Below, piece after piece: positions 10,020 through 64,000 of a DNA stretch of 64,000 nt. A program made the translations under genes and the position numbers. Under the pieces are notes generated by a model, which worked only from the letters and a program-made list of their open reading frames with translations, ran no database searches and was not told where the DNA came from. The first letter of the stretch is position 1; every line of letters starts with the position of its first letter. This DNA comes from Octopus sinensis (Eukaryota), in NCBI RefSeq assembly GCF_006345805.1, contig NC_042999.1, forward strand, positions 137,578,001 through 137,642,000, given 5' to 3'.

Positions 10020-11320
10020 AAAAGCATCAATACCATGAACAGGTCCATTAACAGGGAAAATAGCTTTTGTGTGTGGTAGATGCACAGGTACAATAAAACC
10101 AAAATGTACAGAAAATAGACTCCATCAACTGCCATGAGGATAAGCTAGAGGTAGTAGATATCTCCCGTTACCTAGGTGATCAAGTTAGTAGCAAAGGTGG
10201 ATGCTCTGAGAGCATAACTGTAGAATAGGATTAAGCTGGGCAAAGTTTAGAGAGCTCCTGCCTCTGCAGGCAACAAAAGGCCTCTCTCTCAGAGTGAAAG
10301 GCAGATTGTATGATGCCTGTGTGCAACAGCTATGTTACATGACTGTGAAACATGAACTGTGACAGCCAAGGACATGCATAGGCTTGAAAGAAATTAAGCC
10401 AGTATGTTTCGCTAGATGTTCAATGTCAGTGTGCATGTTCACCAGAGTGTAAGCATCTTGAGAGAAAAGTTAGGCATAAGAGGCATCAGATGTGGTGTGC
10501 AAGAGAGACAACTGTGCTATTATGGTCATATGATGCGTATGAACAAGGATAGCTGTGTAAAGAAGTGTCGCTCTCTGACTGTGGAGGGAAACTATGGTAG
10601 AAGTAGACCCAGGAAGATGTGGGATGAAGTGATGAAGCATGATCTCTGAACTTTGGGCCTCACAGAAGTAATGACAAGTGACCAAGACCTTTGGCAATAT
10701 GTTGTGCTTGAGAAGACTCACCATGCCAAGTGAAATTGCAGTCATGGCTGATGCTGGTGTCATATAACCAGCACTCATGCAGGTGATAAATTAAAAGCAC
10801 CTTTTGAGCATTGAGCCCCATGAATGCAAAATGGTCGAGCTCCTTTTGAATGTTGGGTCTCACAGAGGCAATGACCAAAACCTTTGGCATTATGTTATGC
10901 TTGAGAAGAAGACCCATCGAGCCAAGTAAAATTGCAGATACCATTGTCACACAAATGGCACCTGTGTCGGTGGCATGTAAAAGCACCTTTCGAGCATTGG
11001 GCCTGACAGAGGCAAGGATCAAGACCATTTGGCATTATGCTGGGCTTTGAGCGTTGGGCCTCACGGAGGCAATGACCGAGTCCATTCAGCATTATACCTT
11101 GCTTGAAAAGCAGACCCATCAAGCCAAGTAAAACCGCAGTCATGGCAGATACTAGTGTCATGCATATGGCACATAAGAGCACCCATTATACTCTTGGAGA
11201 GGTTGGTGTTAGGAAGGGCATCCAGCCATAGAAACCATGCCAAAACAGACTGGAGTCTGGTGCAGCCATCCAATTCAAGCCAGCTTGGACAACAGACGTT
11301 AAATGATGATGATGATATAT
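10020..11320 (+). mobile_element. 5'-truncated RTE-clade LINE (RT C-terminus, reiterated 3' modules, (GAT)n tail)
   Basis: LEVVD..YLGDQVSSKGGCSES, then LREKLGIRGIRCGVQERQLCYYGHMMRM...GRSRPRKMWDEVMKHDL (ORF 10416-10649). The tail ends gacgttaaatgatgatgatgat. Confidence 0.9.
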
Positions 11321-11391
11321 ATGATTAATAAGTTTCAAAATGGAGAGATTCAACAGATATAAATTAATTTATAAATTATTTGATTAATGAT

Positions 11392-47290: not shown

Positions 47291-48007
47291 CATGTGTAAC
47301 AACAGTATTAGGTCAGCATAATTTAATCAATAGTTCATGTATTTGACCTTTATAAACAAATTTGTTTCTTTCTTAACTCAAATTTTTCTCCAATATCATC
47401 TTTCAAAGTATAAATCTTAAAATATATAAAAGATACTTTTTCTTGTTTTTGTTTTTCTGTAACATTTCTTATTTAATACATTACTTTTAACATAAGTCTA
47501 CCATAATGCATATAAGTATTGAACTACTATAAACAGTACAAAACTCTATCTTTATAATATTTATCAATATTTAGTACCATTATAGTAAAGTGGTACTTAT
47601 GCCCATAATATAATAATATCCAACTGAGTCAAGAAATACTTTATCACCTCTTGAAAGCTCTGCCATGATTATGGTTTTCATTTTCTTCCTTTCTTTTTCT
47701 TTTTTGAAAGAAAGACTTCATCAAAACAAAATTAAAATTACTATTGAGGCTAATTTTTACTTTCTTAGGTAACTTTGAAGATGTTTATCATTGCTTCTCA
47801 TCTGTTGATCAATCTGTTTAGTTGTGTGTGCGTGTGTGCATAGATGTGTGTGTGCACATGTGTGTGTGTGCACACATGTCTGTGCATGCGTGTGCGTGTG
47901 TAATTTTTTTCTAACTTTGGTACATGTCACAAATTTGTAGGGAAAGTATAGTTGCTTAAATCAACTGTATTACTTGATTGGAATTCTATCAAAGTCAGAA
48001 GGATTAA

Positions 48008-48228
48008 CCCTTTCGTTACCAACCCAGCTGAAAATGGCTCTGGCTCTTTAGTACAAATGTCTTGTTTACATAAGTTTTGAATTCAAATCTTCCACCAAAT
48101 CTTAGTCACAAATTATGTTCTTAACACTAGCTCAATGATAACGATATTATTTTACTAAATTCTTTGTTATATTCAAAATAATTGGAAGAAACACAGAGCA
48201 TCTCAAAATAAATACAGTAACGAAAGGG
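48008..48228. mobile_element. piggyBac-type MITE (221 bp)
   Basis: Perfect 12-bp TIRs ccctttcgttac and gtaacgaaaggg, with TTAA at 48004-07 and 48229-32. A decayed relative lies at about 975-1102. Confidence 0.9.
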
Positions 48229-48729
48229 TTAAAGGCAAAATTGAACTTAGTAGGATTTGAACAAGGCAAAATTGAGAAATTGAGCTTAGTAGGATTTTAA
48301 CATAAAGCTTAAGACTCAAAGGGCTGTAACTAAATATTGCAAAGCATTAATCTCATTAGTCCTTTTATTTACTTTAGAGCAGAGAATTTTCTAGGTCCAT
48401 TGACAAAATGAAAAGCTGTTCCCCATGTACACACACACGTGTGTGTTTGAGCGCATGCACATTTGTGTGTATGCAAAGTAGAAAATGTTCTAAATACATG
48501 CCAAGTTTATTTATTCATTCAAAGCCACTGATGTTTCAATTTGTCAGTATTTTGAATTTCTTACTTATAACATGAAATTAACTGATTTGTGTCTTCAGTA
48601 GCATGACTTTTGGTCAAAACTCTGAGCAGTGAAAACTCAGCTTCAATTCAATTTTATACCATTCATATTGAGAACATTTTCTCAGGTTTTTATGAATATG
48701 TATTCATTCATTTTATACATACATTTGTA

Positions 48730-50995
48730 CATATGCACGTGGATAGCCTGTGGAGATGCTAGAGCAGATACATATATATAGATATGTGCTGTGTACAAGA
48801 AGTAAGAAGGTGGCAAGCTTCAACAATTACTCATGCACAAACAGTAATCAAGTACGCAGACTAGACACATTATTGGCAGAGAAATATCCAGATAAAGTAA
48901 TCAAGGTAGTCAGAGTGTATGCAATAGAATAATTGAGATTAGGCTAGTCTTGAATAACATGATAGTGAAATTTATCACTACTTATGCACCACAATCAGGG
49001 TTCCCAGATGAACAGAATTACTGACCATTTTTATGAAGCCTTCTTGCAGATTATCACAATAACAAATGACAGTGACTTCGTTATTGTAACCGGCAACTCT
49101 AATGGACATGATTGATAAACTTATGACAGCTTTTCCAGCATACATGGAGACTATGGATATTGATACAAAGAATGAGGAGGAATCAAGACTCCTGAAGTTT
49201 TGTGATACAAATTACTTATTTCAAACATTAGTTTTAGGAAAGTGACCAGCCATCTGATTACCAATCAGTTGGGGTAACACACAAGCCAGATAGACTTTAT
49301 ACCCACTAGGAAATGGAATAAACAGATAGTTGTAAAATCTAAGTCTTTCCTTGAGAAATGTATCACTCAACATAGACTAATGATAGCTGATTTCAGAGTA
49401 AAAGTTAGATAGGCCCATAGGTACAAAGAAAATTTGAAAAGGAAGACATGGTAGCTGAAAGAATCTGCAACCAGTTCTAGGTTCAGATAAGTTCTTGTTA
49501 ACATATATGACAGAACAGAGAAAGAGATAGTGATTTATAACATAAAAAGACAATAAGAAGTGCCTGTGGGACAACTTGCTGAAGACTATAAACCAAATCT
49601 GTGGCTATTGCAAGGTTCCAGTCAAGTGGAAAGTGGCACAATAGTGGAATAGTACTGTTGATAGATTTGTAAAAGCTAAAAGACTGGCTTAGAAAGAAAT
49701 GAGGCAGCAAAGAACAATTCAAGTAGCTTGAAGTGAAGCTAGACCTCAGGTATACTTAGCAAGAGGAGAAGCAGGAAGTAAGATGTGTAAACTTCTTTCT
49801 TGCACATGTTGTGATGTGAAGATCATAAACATAAGGTATTCTGGATTGCAAAACAGTGCACTAGAGAAAATCAGTATGTTGTTGAGAAGTGGTTACAGAC
49901 TGAAATGAAAGAAGAATGGAAATGCTATTACAAAAGGTTGTTGAATAAGAATACATAGAAGAGAGAGGGTATATCTTAAGTAGACCCAACAAAGGACCCA
50001 GCAATTGTAGTAGACAGCAGTGTTGTCACTAACACAATTAAAAATAAAAAAGCAGGGAAAGCAGCTGGTCCATCAGAAATAATCGCTGAGATGCTTAAAA
50101 TATCTGGTTAAGTAGAATATATGCATGTCACTCAAACAATCAATCAGGTAGTACAAGAAGGTGTCATACTCAATGGCTGATGCAGTAATGTTATCAACTA
50201 CTGCAAGGTCAAAAGAGATGCAGCAAAGACTGGTAACAACAGTGGCGTTAAATTGATGGAGCAGATTATGAAAGCTGCAGAAAGTTAGGAACAGAATTAG
50301 TCTAGCTGAAATTCAATTGTACTTTGTTCTTGGAAGATTTACTATTGATGCCATCTTCTGAGTGAGACAACTGCAAAAGTTGGGAGAAGATAAGAGTAAA
50401 CCTCTATCCCTAACATTGTTGATTTGCTGAAGGCTTTTGATAGATTTCCATGCTCAGTAGTTTGGCGGTGAATAAGAAAACTAGGAATAGATAAATGTGT
50501 TATGAAGCTAATACAAGCCATGTACAGAGGTGCATTCAACAAGGTAAGAGTTAACAATAAGTTCATGATTAATTTAGTATGCATGTAGAGGGCCATCATA
50601 GTACAGTTTTTAACACCTTTTTATTATAGTAGCCGAGGCCAAACCAGAAGTTCAAGACCAGCTGTCGGTGGGAATTTTTTTTATTGCTGATAACCTTATT
50701 GTAGCTGAATTTGAAGAAGATTTAGAGAAGACATTCTAAGCATGGAAGCAAAACCTAGAACCAAGATAGTCTCATATTAAAGTTTGCAAAGAGTAAAGTT
50801 TTAGTAAGAAGAAAAGAAGGCAGTGCCTTGCTATTATCAGGGAAATAGCTATGCTTGATATGCAGAAATTTAATATGGTGTATTCAGTTTAAACTTTGGA
50901 CACTCAAGATGTTAGGGTTAGAGAATCATAGACAGGTTAGAGGAGAAAGTAGACTTCATATATGGTAGATGTGAAGGAATACCTAGTAATAAGAA
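48730..50995 (+). mobile_element. Old, near-full-length RTE LINE, 5' part (APE endonuclease and most of the RT)
   Basis: MCCVQEVR, TYAPQSG, SQIDFI (endonuclease); VDLLKAFDR and ADNL-type remnants (RT); ends in RLEEKVDFIYGRCEG. Many stops and frameshifts. Confidence 0.85.
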
Positions 50996-52725
50996 TATGC
51001 CTTCCTTTACTGTCTATTTTCCATGCTGGCATGGGCTGGATGATTTGACAGGAGCTGGCAAGGCCAAGAGCTGTTCTAGGCTCCAATGTCTGTTTTGGTA
51101 TGCTTTCTACAGCTGCATGCCCTTTCTAAAGCCAACCTTTACAGAGTGTACTGGGTGCTTTTTATGTGGCACCAGCACCAGTGGGGCCACCAAGTAACTT
51201 CAGCTGGGAGGGGAGAGTAGTATTGAGGGAGGTGGCTTTGAGAGTAAGAGCAAACAAGTGAGGTGTTAATGATGGAGAACAGTACAGGGGAGAGAAGGCA
51301 CAGAAAAGCGGTGGTTGGGAGAAGATAATGAGAAATGGAAGTAGTCTAGAGTGGGGAAAAAAGGTAACTGAGAAAGCAGTGGGATGCCGTATATGCCTAT
51401 TCTGGGGATGAAATGTGAAAAAGATGGTCAATGGGGCAGACCCCCACCCCACTCCACCTATGGACAAGCATTACAAAGTGGTTTGGGGATATCAACTTTG
51501 TTGTTGTGGATAGGTCTACTTGAGTGCTGTGAGGCACCTCATATCTCAATCCTCTGACATCCCCTTCATAAGGTTCAGTGTCTTAAGATCAACTCTCAAT
51601 GCTTCATCCCATATCTTCCCAGGTCTCCCTTTTCCACAAGTTCCAGTACTATGCAACTGTCCTCGTCCATATGCATCACATGACCAAACCAATGCAGTCC
51701 TCTCTTGCATACTGCATCTAATTCCCCTTATGCCTAATTTTTCTCTCAATACACAAGCACACTATCATACATGTACACTGACATTGCACAGCCAGCAGAG
51801 CATACTAGCTTCATTCCTCTCTTGTCTTTGTTTGTCCTCTGCATTCAGGACCCTTGTCTCACTACCACATAGCATTGCTGTTCATACACAAGCATCATAC
51901 AATCTTGCTTTCACTTGGAGGGAGAGGGACCTTTGGTTGCCAACAGCAGTAAAAGCTTTCTGAATTTTCTCCATCCTGTTCTTATTCTAGCAATTAAACT
52001 TTTGCTACATCCTCCTCTATTGCTAATTAGACAACATAGGAAGCAGAAATTATCCACTACCTTTAGAGAGCTTCTGGAGCATTTGAGAAAATCAATTTCG
52101 CATGTATCTGTAGACTTTATGCTTCCTGTGCATCTTCCACATACAAACATTATTTTCTCTGTTAACCTTCCTATTATTCCACTGCACCTCTTGTGTGTCC
52201 ATAGTTTGCGCTGGGTAGACTGAATGGAATTCATGCCAAGACCTTTCCTACATATCAACCAGGGCTATTTACCTGAAGTGGGTGGGGTCCTGCTCATTTT
52301 CTTGCTTACTAGGACCTTGGTTTTTGCTAAGCTAACTTTAAGGCCCTTCATTTCCAGGTTTTGCTTCCACACCTGGGATTTCTTTTCTAGTTGTTACAGA
52401 TTCTACTATCATCAGCATATAGAAGTTCCCATGGGCAGCTGATCTTAAATTCCTGTAATAGCCTGGAGGGTGGTGATGAATAGGAGGGGTGCTGAGGACC
52501 AAGCCTTGGTGAAAACCTACTCATACACTAAATTTATTACAGCACACATGCCTAACTCTTACCTTATTAACAACACCCCTGTACTTAGTCTGTACTGATT
52601 TCACAAACTATTCATCTATCTCTCGCTTCCTCAGAGACTATCATATCACAGAGCAAGCTACTCTATTGAAGGCTTTCTCCAAATCAACAAATGCCAAGTA
52701 TAGCAGCTTATTCTTGGTTAAATAC
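50996..52725 (-). mobile_element. Younger 5'-truncated RTE LINE nested inside the plus-strand RTE
   Basis: From TKNKLLYLAFVDLEKAFNRV (about 52700), through the Cys-rich insert (ORF 51911-52258) and MREKLGIRGIRCSMQER, to the tail at about 51000. Confidence 0.85.
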
Positions 52726-53330
52726 TACTCTTTACATCTTATTGTTAAATGCTTGGAAGACTCACTAGAAGTAGTAAATAGTTTTCATTACTTTGGTGAT
52801 CTAATTAATAGAGGAGGTAAGAGTTCTGAAAGCATAGCAACTGGACGAAGAATAGGTTGGAAAAACTTCAGGGAGCTATTACCTTTGCAGATAACAAATG
52901 GTATGATACTTGTGTACAAAGTGTGATGCTACATGGGTGTGATATATGGGCTTTGAATGTAGATTTGCAACAGCTGGAAAGAAACAAAGCAAACGTGCTC
53001 CAGTGGATGTGTAATGTTAAGTGTGCACAAATGAGCTGAAAGAAATGCCAAAAGCGGCCTCAGATACAATGTTTAGAAGAAAAGAATGCACTAGTATGTA
53101 TGTGTGATATAATGAAGGATGTCTGCTCAGTTAAGAAATGCTAAATACTTTAAGTGGATGGAATCTATAATTGATGTAGGACATCTAGGAATTCTTGTAA
53201 TGCAGTGGTGAAGATTGAGCCTCACAAATATGACAAAGAACTGTGATGAATGGTGGCAGGTAGTTCCAGAGAAGACCTGTCCATTGGTGCAAGCAGGGCA
53301 AAATGGTCATTAAAGTGGTGGTTGAGATGA
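52726..53330 (+). mobile_element. Continuation (3' part) of the old plus-strand RTE
   Basis: KCLEDSLEVVNSFHYFGDLINRGGKSSESIATGRRIGWKNFRELLP resumes where 50995 stops. Confidence 0.85.
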
Positions 53331-53559
53331 AGACTGGATGTGTAACATATCTACATAGGATCTATCATCCATTATATTCTTGCCAAGTAACCATCTACTG
53401 TCATCTTTACTCTTTCATTCACCCTCACTTTTATTTACTGCACCATGCTGCCTGTGTTATAGGGAAAGTATTCTACAGGGTGCATTGGGTAAATTGTTGC
53501 CATTTTATATTTTTAATGTTGCACATGCACATTTATTTTTAATTTTGTCGACTACACAG

Positions 53560-54315
53560 TACAGTAGGGTCAGTTGGGCACCATCTATGAGAAAAACAGT
53601 ACCATGACACAATTCACTCTGCCAGAAATTTGGAAATGACATGTACTGCTTGGTATTCATGCCAGAAGCTTCAATACGAACATTTCAGCGTTTTTGGATG
53701 TCAATCTGAAGACATATACCGAGAGTGATAAAAGTCAACATCCTGGTGTTTGGAGTGATCACTAGTGATGGCAACATTATGTCTCCATTCATCTTCCCAC
53801 ACAGCCTCAGACTAAACACAGAGGCCTACATCAAGTGCCTGGAGGAGGTAGTGTTGCCCTGGGTCAAGAGGGTGGCTGCTGGAAGACCCTGTCTAGCAAC
53901 AGAATTCTGCACCCATGCCACACAAGCAGGAGAACCCAGTCATACAATTTCTGCGACCACATCGCTCCTAACATCTGGCCACCTAACTCCCCAGACTGCA
54001 ACCCCCTTGATTATTATGTGTGGGGTACAGTTGAGTGAGAGACCAACAAAACTCCTTGTAACACCAAAGATGAGGTGTAGGCAAGGATTATGACAGCGTT
54101 CATCAACTTAAACAAGGAGACCATCCAGAAGAGTTTCAGGAGATTCCAAAGTCATCTGGAAGCCATAGTTAAAGCCAATGGCAATTTTATGAATAAATTT
54201 ATTCTTTAGTATTTCAAGATATTTTTATGTAATTTTGGTAAATATATCTGTTAAAATGAGATGTCAGCGTCATTTTCATTTTTGCGTAATTTTGACGACA
54301 GTTTATTCACCGTAC
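53560..54315 (+). mobile_element. maT/DD37D-type Tc1/mariner relic (internally deleted)
   Basis: VFGVITSDG...YIKCLEEVVLPW and QQNSAP..HTSRRTQ...NIWPPNSPDCNPLDYYVWG. Confidence 0.85.
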
Positions 54316-55419
54316 CCTGTATTTGTCCCTATTCAATCCCCACTACAACCACCGGTTATTGCTCTTTCTTTCTTCCATCACCCTTTATCATTACTTTTCT
54401 TCTATAATCACTCCTTTACTACTTTACATCTGTGTAACAGGGAGGGATGCATTGGATCTGTCCATATCCAGTATTCTTCTAGCATCACCCTTCGTTACCA
54501 CTAGCTACAACTCTCACTCTCACCCACATCACTCTTCATCATCATCTACAACTCTCAGTATCACCCATCTCTATTGTTATTCATCACTCATTCTCCCTTA
54601 CTATCACTTATTTTTATTGATAACTCCTATCAACCCATTCATGCTGTTTTCCATTCGATCTCTTAACCAATAACCAACAAGTAGTTATCACTGCTTCTCT
54701 TCCATTACTCTCTCTCCCCTCCTCTCCTCCCTCACTTATTCTGTTTATGCCCCTCAAACTCATACTTTCTCTTTTTTCATCCTCTTAGTCATCACTCTCT
54801 TCTATTTACCTTTTCAATCATGTTTGCTTTGAAAGGAAAAACACAACATAGAGTAGAGAGGACTTTTTAATCTTGCCAAGGACATGACAATCTTTCTAAT
54901 GCTGATGCCATAATAAAATGCACCTAGTACACACCATGAAGTGAATGGTGTTAGAAAGGGCATCCAACCATGGAAACTAGGCCATAAATTAAGCATAAAA
55001 GATGTGGTTTCATGAACCATCTAGGATGCCTGTAACTCTGAATAAGAACTGACTTGTATCACAGCAACCCATCCAATATGGAAAGTGAATGTAAAATAAT
55101 GTTGATAACACAATTTCGTTTTTATGTCCATGCTGACAACACTTCTTGAGGTTAGATTCCTTGGTTAGATGCCCTTTCTGATGCAAACCCTTATTTTCAC
55201 AAAAGAATTTTATTCCACATCTTAGCATATCAAATCACTGAGCTTCTGGACATTTCATTTATGCAGGACATAAATAATATCACCACTGACCAAACAGTAT
55301 CAATGCAAAGATTCACACACATATGCACACACAAATTAAGCAAACACAAATCCTATCCTTTTTACATTATAACCTATATATTATTTAGATACTTAGGTAA
55401 CTATATATTATTTAGGTAG

Positions 55420-62149: not shown

Positions 62150-64000
62150 TCCTCATCATCATCATCATCATCAACATTTAACATCCACTTTCCATGGTGG
62201 CATGGGTTGGACAGTTTGACTGTAAGCTGGTAAGCCAGGGGGCTGCACCAGGTTCCGATTTCATTTGGCAAGGTTTCTACAGCTGGATACCCTTCCTAAA
62301 ACCATTCACTCTGAGAGTGTAGTGGGTGTTTTTTATATGTTACTGGCACATATGCCAATGACTTGAAACCAGTATTGGCCACAACTACAATCTCAGTTGG
62401 CTTGACAGGTCTACTACAAGCACAGTATATTGCCAAAGGTCTTGGTCACCTGTCTCTGCCTCCATGACGCCCAACACTCAAATAATGCTTTTTATGTGCC
62501 ACTGGCATGGGTGCAAGTCAGATGGCATTGACATCAGCCACAACTATAATTTCACTCAGTTTGACAGGTCTTCACAAGCACAGCATATCACCCAACACTG
62601 AAGGGTGTTTTCAACAAGCCAGTTACACGACACTGGCATCAGTCACAACTATGATCTCACTTGGCTTGATGAGGCCCAATGCTCGGATGGTACTTTTTAC
62701 GTGTCACTAGCACAGGTGCAAGTCACAGTGCACTGGCATTGAACACAACTACAATTTCACTCGGCTCAACAAGTCTTCACAAGCAAAGCATATCGCCCAA
62801 TGACTGAAGGATGTTTTTAACAGGCCAGTTACGCAACACTGGCATTGGCCATGACTACGATCTTACTTGGCTTGATGGGTCTTCTCAAGCATGGCATATA
62901 TCCAAAGGTCTCAGTCGCTTGTCATTGCCTCTATGAAACCTAACATTTCAAAATCATGCTTCACCACTTCGTCCCATGTCTTCCTGGGTCTACCTCTTCC
63001 ATAGGTTCCCTCCACTGTTAGAATTCAACACTTCTTCACACAGCTGTCCTCATCCATATGCATCACATGACCATACCACTGCAGTTGACTCTCTTGCAAG
63101 TCCAACTTTTCTCTCAGGACACTTACATTCTGTCGTGCAAGCACACTGACATTACACATCCAACAGAGCATACTAGCTTCATTTCTTACAAGCCTACACA
63201 TATCTTCAGAAGTCATAGCCCATGTTTCACTGCCATGTAGCATGGCTGTTCACACACAGGCATCATACAGTCTGCCTTTCATTTTGAGCAAGAGGCCCTT
63301 CGTTACCAACAGAGGTAGGAGCTCTCTGAATTTTGCCCAGCCTATTCTTATTCTAAAAGCTATGCTCTCAGAGCATTCACCAAGGTAACAGAAGCTATCG
63401 ACTACATCTAGTTTTTCCTACTGGTATGTGAATGAATCTATTTTCTGTACATCTTCAATGTTTACTGCCACTGCGCACCATCCACACACAAAAACTATCA
63501 CCTATGCTAACCTTCCTCTGATATCGTTGCACCTCTTATGTGTCCATAGCTTACACTGGGTATATCTTATGGAGTTTCTAACTATGCCTTTTCTACAGAT
63601 TGAGCAGGGCCATCACCTGAAGGGATTTGTGATTTATCTACCTCCCTACTTTATTTCATTAAGATTTGCCATAAAGGCAACCGGGCGGGGCCCCGGGACG
63701 ATGGGATCCTGGGGCCGCAATGTGCATTTGAGGTGTCGATGTTCACTGAGTCCCGTAATTCGCATCAGTTCACGTGGATAGCCATGCTCTTCATCGACGG
63801 ACAAGCCGAGTGATCCCCCATCCAATCTATACTTACCTCCCTACTTACTAAGACTTTGGTTTTTACTAGGTTAACTCTAAGGCCCTTTGATTTTAGACCT
63901 TGCTTCCATACCTGAAACTTCTCTAGTTCTGGTAGTGATTCAGCTATAAGAGCAAGTTCATCAGCATAGAAGAGATTATAGCCTACTCCACCAGATATTT
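62150..64000 (-). mobile_element. RTE LINE (RT from the YADD region to the tail), with reiterated 3' modules and a 5.8S insertion
   Basis: FYADELALIAES (about 63970), WPCSICRKG...WTHKRC...CGWC, MLHGSETWAMTSEDMCRLVRNEASML (ORF 63025-63243), and an (ATC)n tail at about 62150. Confidence 0.9.
63652..63833 (-). pseudogene. 5.8S rRNA retrocopy with a 13-bp TSD
   Basis: Minus strand reads ggatcactcggcttgtccgtcgatgaagagc...gaacatcgacac...gcacattgcggcccc...ccggggcc, which matches conserved 5.8S blocks. TSD tacctccctactt at 63639-63651 and 63834-63846. Confidence 0.88.

What the first reader, a model, noticed from the sequence alone, without database searches (positions are those of the whole stretch)
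63639..63846. Near-full-length 5.8S rRNA retroposed into an RTE LINE with a 13-bp target-site duplication
Seen: a GC- and CpG-rich 182-bp insert interrupts the RTE ORF just before the PHD-like region. About 140-150 nt match conserved 5.8S blocks (GGATCACTCGGC, GTCGATGAAGA, GAACATCGACAC, GCACATTGCGGCC). It is flanked by tacctccctactt on both sides and followed by about 25 nt of AT-rich non-5.8S sequence (cctttatggcaaatcttaatgaaata). Known: TSDs of this size are typical of LINE target-primed reverse transcription, and rRNA-derived SINEs are known from 5S and 28S. Inference: either a single retrocopy of a 3'-extended 5.8S precursor, or a member of an unrecognised 5.8S-derived SINE-like family if the same tail recurs elsewhere.
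Basis: partly seen in the sequence, partly recalled or inferred. Interest (0 to 1): 0.7.

Follow-up and report, generated by a model that had tools for sequence, protein, structure and literature searches.

The report
Lone decaying 5.8S rRNA retrocopy in octopus LINE
A single reverse-transcribed copy of the animal's own 5.8S ribosomal RNA landed inside an old jumping-gene remnant in what is most likely an octopus genome; it is an ordinary dead pseudogene, and I found no sign of a new family of mobile elements.

Summary
A 182-bp insert (63652-63833, minus strand) sits between two perfect copies of TACCTCCCTACTT and gives a full-length Rfam 5.8S hit (71 bits). Two uninterrupted copies of the same RT-PHD LINE family, one in the window and one in Octopus vulgaris, carry a single 13-mer and no insert, so this is a true insertion with a target-site duplication.

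The insert first looked strongly diverged: at most 78% identical to 120 real 5.8S genes, which score 115-148 bits. Cephalopod rDNA recovered later explains this. Against the closest rDNA contig (L123), 5.8S positions 6-150 align without gaps at 134/145. Eight of the 11 differences are CpG decay, and only 3 of 107 non-CpG sites differ.

It is therefore a retrocopy of the host lineage's own, naturally atypical, 5.8S, very roughly 8 My old. The last 7 nt of mature 5.8S are missing. The 26-nt tail matches neither ITS2 nor the host LINE's 3' end, so the "3'-extended precursor" idea fails.

I found no second copy of the insert or its tail, no Pol III boxes in the sense orientation and no terminator. 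The SINE idea is unsupported, though it cannot be excluded without a whole-genome search. Low interest.

The parts
63639..63651 (.). Target-site duplication, copy next to the element's 3' end (TACCTCCCTACTT on the + strand, AAGTAGGGAGGTA in element orientation)
   Evidence: Exactly two copies in the window. Paralog and O. vulgaris copies have one homologous 13-mer.
63652..63677 (-). 26-nt non-5.8S 3' tail, CCTTTATGGCAAATCTTAATGAAATA. No poly(A). Origin unknown.
   Evidence: Not aligned to cephalopod 5.8S or ITS2. Unique in the window and L121 at up to 3 mismatches. Similarity to the host LINE 3' end is not significant, P=0.125.
63678..63824 (-). 5.8S rRNA-derived segment, positions about 6-152 of the 159-nt cephalopod 5.8S. 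A pseudogene with CpG decay.
   Evidence: RF00002 71.2 bits. Ungapped 134/145 identity to the L123 rDNA 5.8S; 8 of 11 differences are CpG>TpG/CpA.
63825..63833 (-). 9-nt 5' filler (AGTATAGAT) replacing the first 5 nt of 5.8S. Origin unknown.
   Evidence: Does not match the 5.8S 5' end or the ITS1 end of L122-L124.
63834..63846 (.). Target-site duplication, copy next to the element's 5' end
62150..63638 (-). Host LINE fragment downstream of the insert: PHD-like Cys motif, RT thumb region with stops and frameshifts, and a 3' UTR ending in a hairpin CCATGC..GCATGG plus GTTAAAT(G)(ATG)n near 62150-62170
   Evidence: Translation. Homologues carry RVT_1+PHD, best named hits Octopus. The 3' end is defined by seven copies.
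63847..64000 (-). Host LINE fragment upstream of the insert (RT 'FYADEL...KTKVLVS'), running off the window end
   Evidence: Weak RVT_1 hit. 86.5% match to O. vulgaris L121 1787-1927.

Best explanation
This is a solitary processed pseudogene of the host lineage's own 5.8S rRNA. The steps below are marked as shown or inferred.

1. Insertion (inferred mechanism). A LINE reverse transcriptase nicked the target inside an old RT-PHD LINE copy. The nick on the + strand falls after ...CTACTT. The enzyme copied an RNA by target-primed reverse transcription, and a staggered second nick produced the 13-bp target-site duplication.

2. What was inserted (shown). The inserted cDNA carries 5.8S positions about 6-152, flanked by 9 nt of unrelated sequence at the 5' side and 26 nt at the 3' side.

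3. Origin of the tail (inferred, unproven). The most likely source of the 3' tail is that reverse transcription began on another RNA's 3' end and then switched template onto 5.8S rRNA. That is the same route that makes chimeric small-RNA retrocopies. The 5' filler would be junction filler.

4. Decay since insertion (shown). The copy has decayed as methylated DNA. About 8-9 of 19-20 CpGs are lost and about 2.8% of non-CpG sites have changed. This suggests very roughly 8 My (range 2-22 My).

5. Function. None is implied.
For: - Full-length RF00002 hit.
- Perfect 13-bp direct repeat, the only two copies in the window.
- Empty sites with a single 13-mer in the in-window paralog and in an O. vulgaris copy of the same LINE family.
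- The insert boundaries fall within 5-7 nt of the mature 5.8S ends, with no ITS sequence. This argues for an RNA intermediate.
- 134/145 ungapped identity to the 5.8S of a genuine rDNA contig (L123: 5.8S 117 bits, then ITS2 and the LSU 5' end).
- 8 of 11 differences are CpG-decay transitions, and only 3 of 107 non-CpG sites differ.
- An intact TSD is expected at 2.8% divergence.
- The host is cephalopod: the best named LINE homologues, at 56-71% identity, are from Octopus vulgaris and O. bimaculoides.
- Octopus has many recently active non-L1 LINE families, including RTE, Dong-R4 and CR1 (PMC13282606; PMC9115989).
- The host LINE family itself ends in a hairpin plus (ATG)n with no poly(A). Retrocopies without A-tails are therefore expected in this genome.
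- The insert is single-copy in everything I could reach.
Against: - The tail's source RNA is unidentified. It matches neither the host LINE family's 3' end (P=0.125) nor anything else available, so the template-switch step is inference.
- Filler at both junctions is also seen in DNA-level (end-joining) insertions.
- L123's organism is not stated by the tools. It is called octopod-type only because it fits the insert best, and because L124 groups with the cuttlefish fragment L122.
- The age estimate borrows a rate from PMC13282606 and rests on 3 substitutions.
- Copy number in the source genome could not be measured.
Confidence: 0.72

Rival explanations
1. Member of an unrecognised 5.8S-headed SINE-like family. 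A 5.8S-derived head is fused to a LINE-recognised 3' tail and is amplified by an octopus LINE.
For: - The element is composite: 5.8S body plus an unrelated 26-nt tail.
- There is no poly(A), as expected for SINEs mobilised by stringent LINEs.
- O. vulgaris has 893 'unclassified SINE' families with recent activity (PMC13282606).
- 5.8S heads are absent from the published list of rDNA-derived TEs (PMC10946416), so such a family could have gone unnoticed.
Against: - No second copy turned up in the 64-kb window, in 21 kb of O. vulgaris or in 40 kb of cuttlefish, nor in the collection scans.
- The six-frame protein search found only rDNA or an rDNA fragment.
- The 5.8S part is the rDNA sequence plus CpG decay, with no family-specific diagnostic changes.
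- There is no Pol III A/B box in the sense orientation and no terminator.
- The tail is not significantly similar to the only LINE 3' end available.
Confidence: 0.07
2. Retrocopy of an aberrant or 3'-extended pre-rRNA, or of a variant rDNA unit. On this view the tail is species-specific spacer sequence or an aberrantly processed end.
For: - ITS2 evolves fast, and the rDNA of the window's exact species is not in hand.
- Degenerate rDNA units do exist in cephalopod genomes (L122).
Against: - The last 7 nt of mature 5.8S (AGAGGCG) are conserved in L122, L123 and L124 but absent from the insert. The tail therefore does not simply continue the transcript.
- The ITS2 starts of all three cephalopod-type sequences are unrelated to the tail.
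- The 5' end also lacks the first 5 nt and has no ITS1 match.
Confidence: 0.08
3. DNA-level capture of an rDNA fragment at a double-strand break, by end joining with filler DNA. No reverse transcription is involved.
For: - Unrelated filler lies at both junctions: 9 nt and 26 nt.
- There is no poly(A).
- Dispersed DNA-level rDNA fragments occur in cephalopods (L122 carries 5.8S+ITS2+LSU together) and in human (PMC5381670).
Against: - A clean 13-bp target-site duplication is the signature of staggered LINE nicking, not of typical end joining.
- The fragment is trimmed to within 5-7 nt of both mature RNA ends and carries no spacer. That would be a coincidence for a random DNA fragment.
Confidence: 0.08
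4. Assembly chimera: rDNA reads wrongly joined into a LINE copy.
For: Both rDNA and LINEs are repeats prone to misassembly. Reads are not available to me.
Against: - A misjoin would not create a perfect 13-bp duplication of the host sequence flanking the insert, with the host LINE continuing exactly on either side.
- The insert carries CpG decay that is absent from rDNA.
Confidence: 0.02

Closest known systems
Dispersed/processed 5.8S rRNA pseudogenes (e.g. the human RNA5-8SP genes) and other small-RNA retropseudogenes
   Same: An isolated copy of a mature-length 5.8S outside the rDNA, non-functional and decaying. The RNA5-8SP names appear in many papers.
   Different: This one is in a cephalopod and has no A-tail. 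It lacks 5 nt at the 5' end and 7 nt at the 3' end of the RNA, and carries unrelated 9-nt and 26-nt junction sequences. I did not verify how the human copies arose.
LINE-mediated chimeric retrocopies formed by template switching (U6-L1, 5S-L1 and similar; my background knowledge, not tested here)
   Same: A small structured RNA as the 5' part, an unrelated 3' part, and one shared target-site duplication.
   Different: In the known cases the 3' part is recognisably a LINE, mRNA or Alu 3' end with poly(A). Here the 26-nt tail is unidentified and has no A-run.
rRNA-headed SINEs: 5S-derived SINE3-type families and 28S-derived SINE28 (PMC10946416)
   Same: An rRNA-derived body joined to a different 3' tail and inserted with a TSD.
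   Different: Those are multi-copy families, and the 5S-derived ones have an internal Pol III promoter. Here only one copy is seen and there are no A/B boxes. 5.8S is not transcribed from its own promoter.
DNA-level dispersed rDNA fragments (human: PMC5381670; cuttlefish locus L122)
   Same: rDNA-derived sequence outside the arrays that has escaped concerted evolution.
   Different: Those fragments carry contiguous gene plus spacer (L122: 5.8S+ITS2+LSU). This insert holds 5.8S only, is trimmed near the mature ends, and has a TSD.

Membership tests
Processed (LINE-retroposed) small-RNA pseudogene | Flanked by a target-site duplication, with the uninterrupted target sequence demonstrable | tested here: met
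   13/13 direct repeat, the only two copies in the window. A single 13-mer and no insert in the in-window paralog and in the O. vulgaris copy.
Processed (LINE-retroposed) small-RNA pseudogene | Corresponds to the mature RNA of the host, without flanking spacer or gene-neighbour sequence | tested here: met
   5.8S positions 6-152 of 159, 134/145 identical to cephalopod rDNA L123, with no ITS1 or ITS2 similarity. The species of L123 is not known.
Processed (LINE-retroposed) small-RNA pseudogene | 3' end bears poly(A) or the 3' tail of the mobilising LINE | tested here: inconclusive
   No A-run. The 26-nt tail is unidentified and not significantly like the host LINE family's 3' end (P=0.125). 3' ends of other octopus LINE families were not available.
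SINE (non-autonomous retroposon family) | Many dispersed copies sharing head and tail, each with its own TSD | tested here: inconclusive
   No second copy in about 125 kb of cephalopod DNA or in any scan. The source genome itself could not be searched.
SINE (non-autonomous retroposon family) | Internal promoter (Pol III A/B boxes or 5S-type) and terminator | tested here: not met
   No A or B box within 2 mismatches on the sense strand and no T4 run. This was a consensus scan only.
SINE (non-autonomous retroposon family) | 3' tail shared with a partner LINE | tested here: inconclusive
   Only one LINE family's 3' end could be reconstructed, and it showed no significant similarity.
Functional 5.8S rRNA gene (RF00002) | Scores as 5.8S and lies between SSU and LSU in an rDNA unit with intact mature ends | tested here: not met
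   The score passes gathering (71.2 bits), but real genes score 115-148 bits. There is no SSU or LSU in the window. The first 5 and last 7 nt are replaced, and 8-9 CpG-decay mutations are present.
Retrocopy of a 3'-extended 5.8S precursor | Complete mature 3' end continuing into the ITS2 start | tested here: not met
   The mature end AGAGGCG is absent. The tail is unrelated to the ITS2 starts of L122-L124. ITS2 of the exact species is unavailable.
RTE-clade LINE (host element) | Single ORF with an APE-type endonuclease plus RT, placed in the RTE clade by phylogeny | not testable with these tools
   Only the RT C-terminal part and the PHD region lie in the window, and the paralog is 5'-truncated. 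Homologues show RVT_1+PHD. The 3' end with a hairpin plus (ATG)n is compatible with a non-poly(A) LINE but is not diagnostic.

The most novel reading that the evidence does not exclude
The insert is one member of a low-copy or young octopod retroposon family. On this reading a 5.8S-derived body is fused to a short LINE-recognised 3' module, the 26-nt tail. That would be the first SINE-like element with a 5.8S head, possibly hidden among the hundreds of 'unclassified SINE' families reported for O. vulgaris.
Probability: 0.06. Interest if true: 0.6.

Novelty: new member of a known kind. Interest (0 to 1): 0.15.

Why it matters
As a lone 5.8S retro-pseudogene it matters little. It is one more example of LINE machinery occasionally copying an abundant cellular RNA, here in a genome whose active LINEs do not use poly(A).

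Two practical points do come out of it:

1. Cephalopod 5.8S rRNA is atypical: about 117 bits on RF00002, against 135-148 for most other eukaryotes sampled. Cephalopod 5.8S-derived sequences therefore look "highly diverged" unless they are compared with cephalopod rDNA. That trap produced a false signal of structure-preserving evolution in this analysis until the right reference was found.

2. The junction architecture (truncated RNA ends plus an unidentified 26-nt tail) offers a small, testable handle on template switching by non-L1 LINEs, if the tail's source can be found in the full genome.

Tried and rejected
1. "Long-diverged master copy under structural constraint".
- Against 120 non-cephalopod 5.8S genes the insert was at most 78% identical. 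It broke 11 of 67 near-invariant columns, yet kept 22 of 25 base pairs and showed apparently compensated pairs. A neutral-decay simulation gave a joint P of about 0.001.
- I rejected this once cephalopod rDNA was found. Pair 46/53 G-C is typical of the lineage. Pair 45/54 T-A results from two CpG decays in a CGCG/CGCG helix.

2. RNA-editing signature (ADAR- or APOBEC-like). The substitution spectrum was symmetric, and the differences were later explained by CpG decay.

3. Tail = ITS2 or a 3'-extended precursor. Rejected.

4. Tail = 3' end of the host LINE family. The 3' end was reconstructed from seven copies, and the similarity was not significant (P=0.125).

5. Searches for other copies, all negative:
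- junction 22-mer in metagenome contigs;
- insert-specific 25-mer in prokaryote genome contigs and viral contigs;
- tail 24-mer in viral contigs;
- tail with up to 3 mismatches in the window and L121;
- blastn-short against 646 kb of loci;
- the sense-frame translation of the insert against 5.8 billion proteins.

6. Exact-protein look-ups of window ORFs to identify the assembly: nothing on record.

7. Pfam on the degenerate host fragments gave only a weak RVT_1 hit. The PHD domain was seen only through homologues.

8. MFE folding of the insert was no better than shuffles (z = -0.33).

9. One search repeated part by mistake.

Full report
**1.
The 13-mer TACCTCCCTACTT occurs exactly twice in the window, at 63639-63651 and 63834-63846. 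The 182 bp between the two copies (63652-63833) are 53% GC with CpG o/e 0.95. The window as a whole is 33.5% GC with CpG o/e 0.18.

Rfam finds one family above gathering score in the whole window. It is RF00002 (5.8S rRNA) at 63829..63671 on the minus strand, covering model positions 1-154 of 154, with 71.2 bits and E = 1e-15.

**2. It is a real insertion with a target-site duplication.**
The host is a degenerate LINE on the same (minus) strand. The RT motif 'FYADEL...KTKVLVS' lies just upstream of the insert. A Cys-rich 'PCSICRKG..NSI..C..W.H..C' motif and the rest of the RT lie downstream, with stops and frameshifts.

Two other copies of this LINE family lie in the window. The copy at about 51.0-52.3 kb runs straight across the insertion point, with one 13-mer homologous to the duplication and no insert.

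An Octopus vulgaris copy does the same. In L121, from OX597814.1, the sequence reads ...TTAGT GAGTAGGAAGGCA AACACATC.... A misassembly would not produce a perfect duplication of host sequence on both sides of the insert.

**3. Host organism and host element.**
The host LINE protein finds homologues with RVT_1 + PHD (PF00628). The closest named homologues, at 56-71% identity, are from O. vulgaris and O. bimaculoides. L121 contains three copies of the same family. The window is therefore most likely octopod.

The label "RTE" could not be tested, because the endonuclease part lies outside the window and the paralog is 5'-truncated.

Seven copies define this family's 3' end as a hairpin (CCATGC-TA-GCATGG) followed by ...GGACGTTAAA(C/T)GATGATGATG, with no poly(A).

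**4. A false lead, and its correction.**
Genuine 5.8S genes fetched from metagenome contigs (L001-L120) lie between SSU and LSU and score 115-148 bits. The insert scores 71 bits.

The insert was at most 78% identical to any of these genes. It broke 11 of 67 near-invariant columns, against a mean of 1 for the real genes. Yet it kept 22 of 25 consensus base pairs, including pair types never seen in 101 real sequences. A neutral-decay simulation from the closest real genes gave a joint P of about 0.001.

Together with the perfect TSD and the high CpG content, this pointed to a long-diverged, structurally constrained master copy.

The caveat was that no cephalopod 5.8S was in hand. A first protein search with the sense frame found nothing. 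A search with all the other open frames of the insert concatenated found three spurious ORFs. Their DNA turned out as follows:
- L123 (ENA ERZ25513664) and L124 (Logan ERR12716842) are genuine rDNA. Each has a 5.8S scoring 117-118 bits, followed by ITS2 and the LSU 5' end.
- L122 is a degenerate 5.8S+ITS2+LSU fragment inside a 1.48-Mb Acanthosepion pharaonis scaffold.

These sequences already carry most of the insert's "odd" features: GGGGGATCAC, CGTCCGTCG, GAACTGATGCGAATT and GGACTCAGTGAAC.

**5. What the insert is.**
Against L123 the insert aligns without gaps over 5.8S positions 6-150 of 159 (window 63824..63680), with 134 of 145 positions identical. Eight of the 11 differences are CpG>TpG or CpG>CpA changes. 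Only 3 of 107 non-CpG sites differ, and the CpG count falls from 19 to 12. By inspection, position 151 is one more CpG decay (TCG>TTG), which extends the homology to about position 152.

Against L124, which groups with the cuttlefish fragment L122, there are 18 differences.

The "compensated" helix is now explained. Pair 46/53 G-C is typical of the lineage. Pair 45/54 T-A comes from two CpG decays in a CGCG/CGCG helix. I retract the structural-constraint inference.

The insert is a copy of the host lineage's own, naturally atypical, 5.8S rRNA that has since decayed as methylated DNA. PMC13282606 equates a Jukes-Cantor distance of 0.065 with about 18 My in octopus. On that scale, 2.8% non-CpG divergence suggests roughly 8 My. 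This rests on three substitutions and a proxy ancestor, so the range is about 2-22 My. An intact 13-bp TSD is unsurprising at that divergence.

**6. The ends.**
The first 5 nt of 5.8S are replaced by 9 nt (AGTATAGAT, 63833..63825).

The last 7 nt (AGAGGCG) are conserved in L122, L123 and L124 but are replaced in the insert by the 26-nt tail CCTTTATGGCAAATCTTAATGAAATA (63677..63652).

The tail gave no informative match:
- It is unrelated to the ITS2 starts of the three cephalopod-type sequences, and it has no match beyond 11-12 nt in 646 kb of rDNA and cephalopod loci.
- It is unique in the window and in L121 at up to 3 mismatches.
- It is not significantly similar to the host LINE family's 3' end (P=0.125).

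The small hairpin in the tail (TTGCC/GGCAA) partly uses 5.8S-derived bases altered by CpG decay, so it is probably accidental.

The insert has no A-run, no T4 run, and no Pol III A or B box within 2 mismatches on the sense strand.

**7. Mechanism.**
Shown: an insertion with a TSD; boundaries close to the mature RNA ends, with no spacer; a host-lineage 5.8S origin; and decay dominated by CpG loss.

Inferred: target-primed reverse transcription by one of the octopus LINEs. Several non-poly(A) families are reported as recently active. The tail would come from a first template before a switch onto 5.8S rRNA, and the 5' 9 nt would be junction filler.

The rivals are a SINE-like family, an aberrant precursor or variant rDNA transcript, DNA-level capture, and misassembly. 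Each is weighed in its own section. The TSD and the trimming to near-mature ends argue against DNA capture and misassembly. The missing mature 3' end argues against the precursor idea.

**8. Single copy or family?**
Every search I could run was negative. The 5.8S part shows no substitutions beyond rDNA sequence plus decay.

The source genome itself was not searchable, so a low-copy family is not excluded. I put that at about 6-7%.

The published table of rDNA-derived TEs lists 5S and 28S heads only (PMC10946416). The O. vulgaris repeat census lists 5S- and U-derived SINEs plus 893 unclassified SINE families.

**9. Verdict.**
This is a new instance of a known kind, a processed 5.8S rRNA pseudogene. 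Isolated 5.8S pseudogenes are already annotated in human as RNA5-8SP. Its only unusual feature is the unidentified short tail. Interest is low.

Noticed in passing
L123 842-1000 and L124 872-1029 (rDNA contigs), compared with L003-L078: The cephalopod-type 5.8S rRNA is itself atypical. It scores 117-118 bits on RF00002, against 135-148 for most other eukaryotic 5.8S genes sampled. It has a CGCG/CGCG helix and GAACTGATGCGAATT where others have ...TAATGTGAA(T/C)TGC. Comparing cephalopod 5.8S-derived sequences with generic references therefore overstates their divergence.
   Followed up: partly
L122 8910-10662 (Acanthosepion pharaonis CAHIKZ030000428.1, about 0.70 Mb into a 1.48-Mb scaffold): A degenerate rDNA fragment (5.8S 82.6 bits with an internal deletion, ITS2, and a partial LSU at 362 bits) lies inside a scaffold. 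It overlaps gene models annotated as protein-coding (P0103, 'unnamed protein product'). This is likely a dispersed rDNA pseudogene and a spurious gene call.
   Followed up: partly
window about 62150-62360 (minus strand); L121 3095-3330, 3876-4100, 11630-11830 and 16650-16830; window about 50900-51180 and 11160-11330: The RT-PHD LINE family has a well-conserved 3' terminus: a hairpin CCATGC(T/C)AGCATGG, then AAAGCGGACGTTAAA(C/T)G and an (ATG)n run, after which the flanks diverge. This may be useful for finding SINEs mobilised by this family.
   Followed up: partly
window 62464-62877: Two tandem units of about 205 bp, 79% identical, lie around the end of the host LINE's ORF and the start of its 3' UTR (62464-62671 versus 62669-62877).
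   Followed up: no
window 48004-48246 versus L121 4315-4557: A 244-bp repeat is 90% identical between the window and O. vulgaris. That is much closer than the LINE copies (75-80%), so it may be a younger SINE-like element.
   Followed up: no
P0036: A protein labelled 'MAG: hypothetical protein GY766_20280 [Herbaspirillum sp.]' is 57% identical to this cephalopod-type RT-PHD LINE. This is probably eukaryotic (host) DNA binned into a bacterial MAG.
   Followed up: no
L113 and L094 (metagenome contigs): These contigs have 5.8S-like 3' halves joined to 5' halves with no 5.8S homology. They may be rearranged or pseudogenised 5.8S copies in unknown eukaryotes.
   Followed up: no
window 53000-54500, minus strand (translation): Upstream of the 5'-truncated LINE paralog, the translation shows stretches that look like a different, non-LINE repeat (e.g. 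'...GVAVWGVRWPDVRSDVVAEIV...'). I did not identify it.
   Followed up: no
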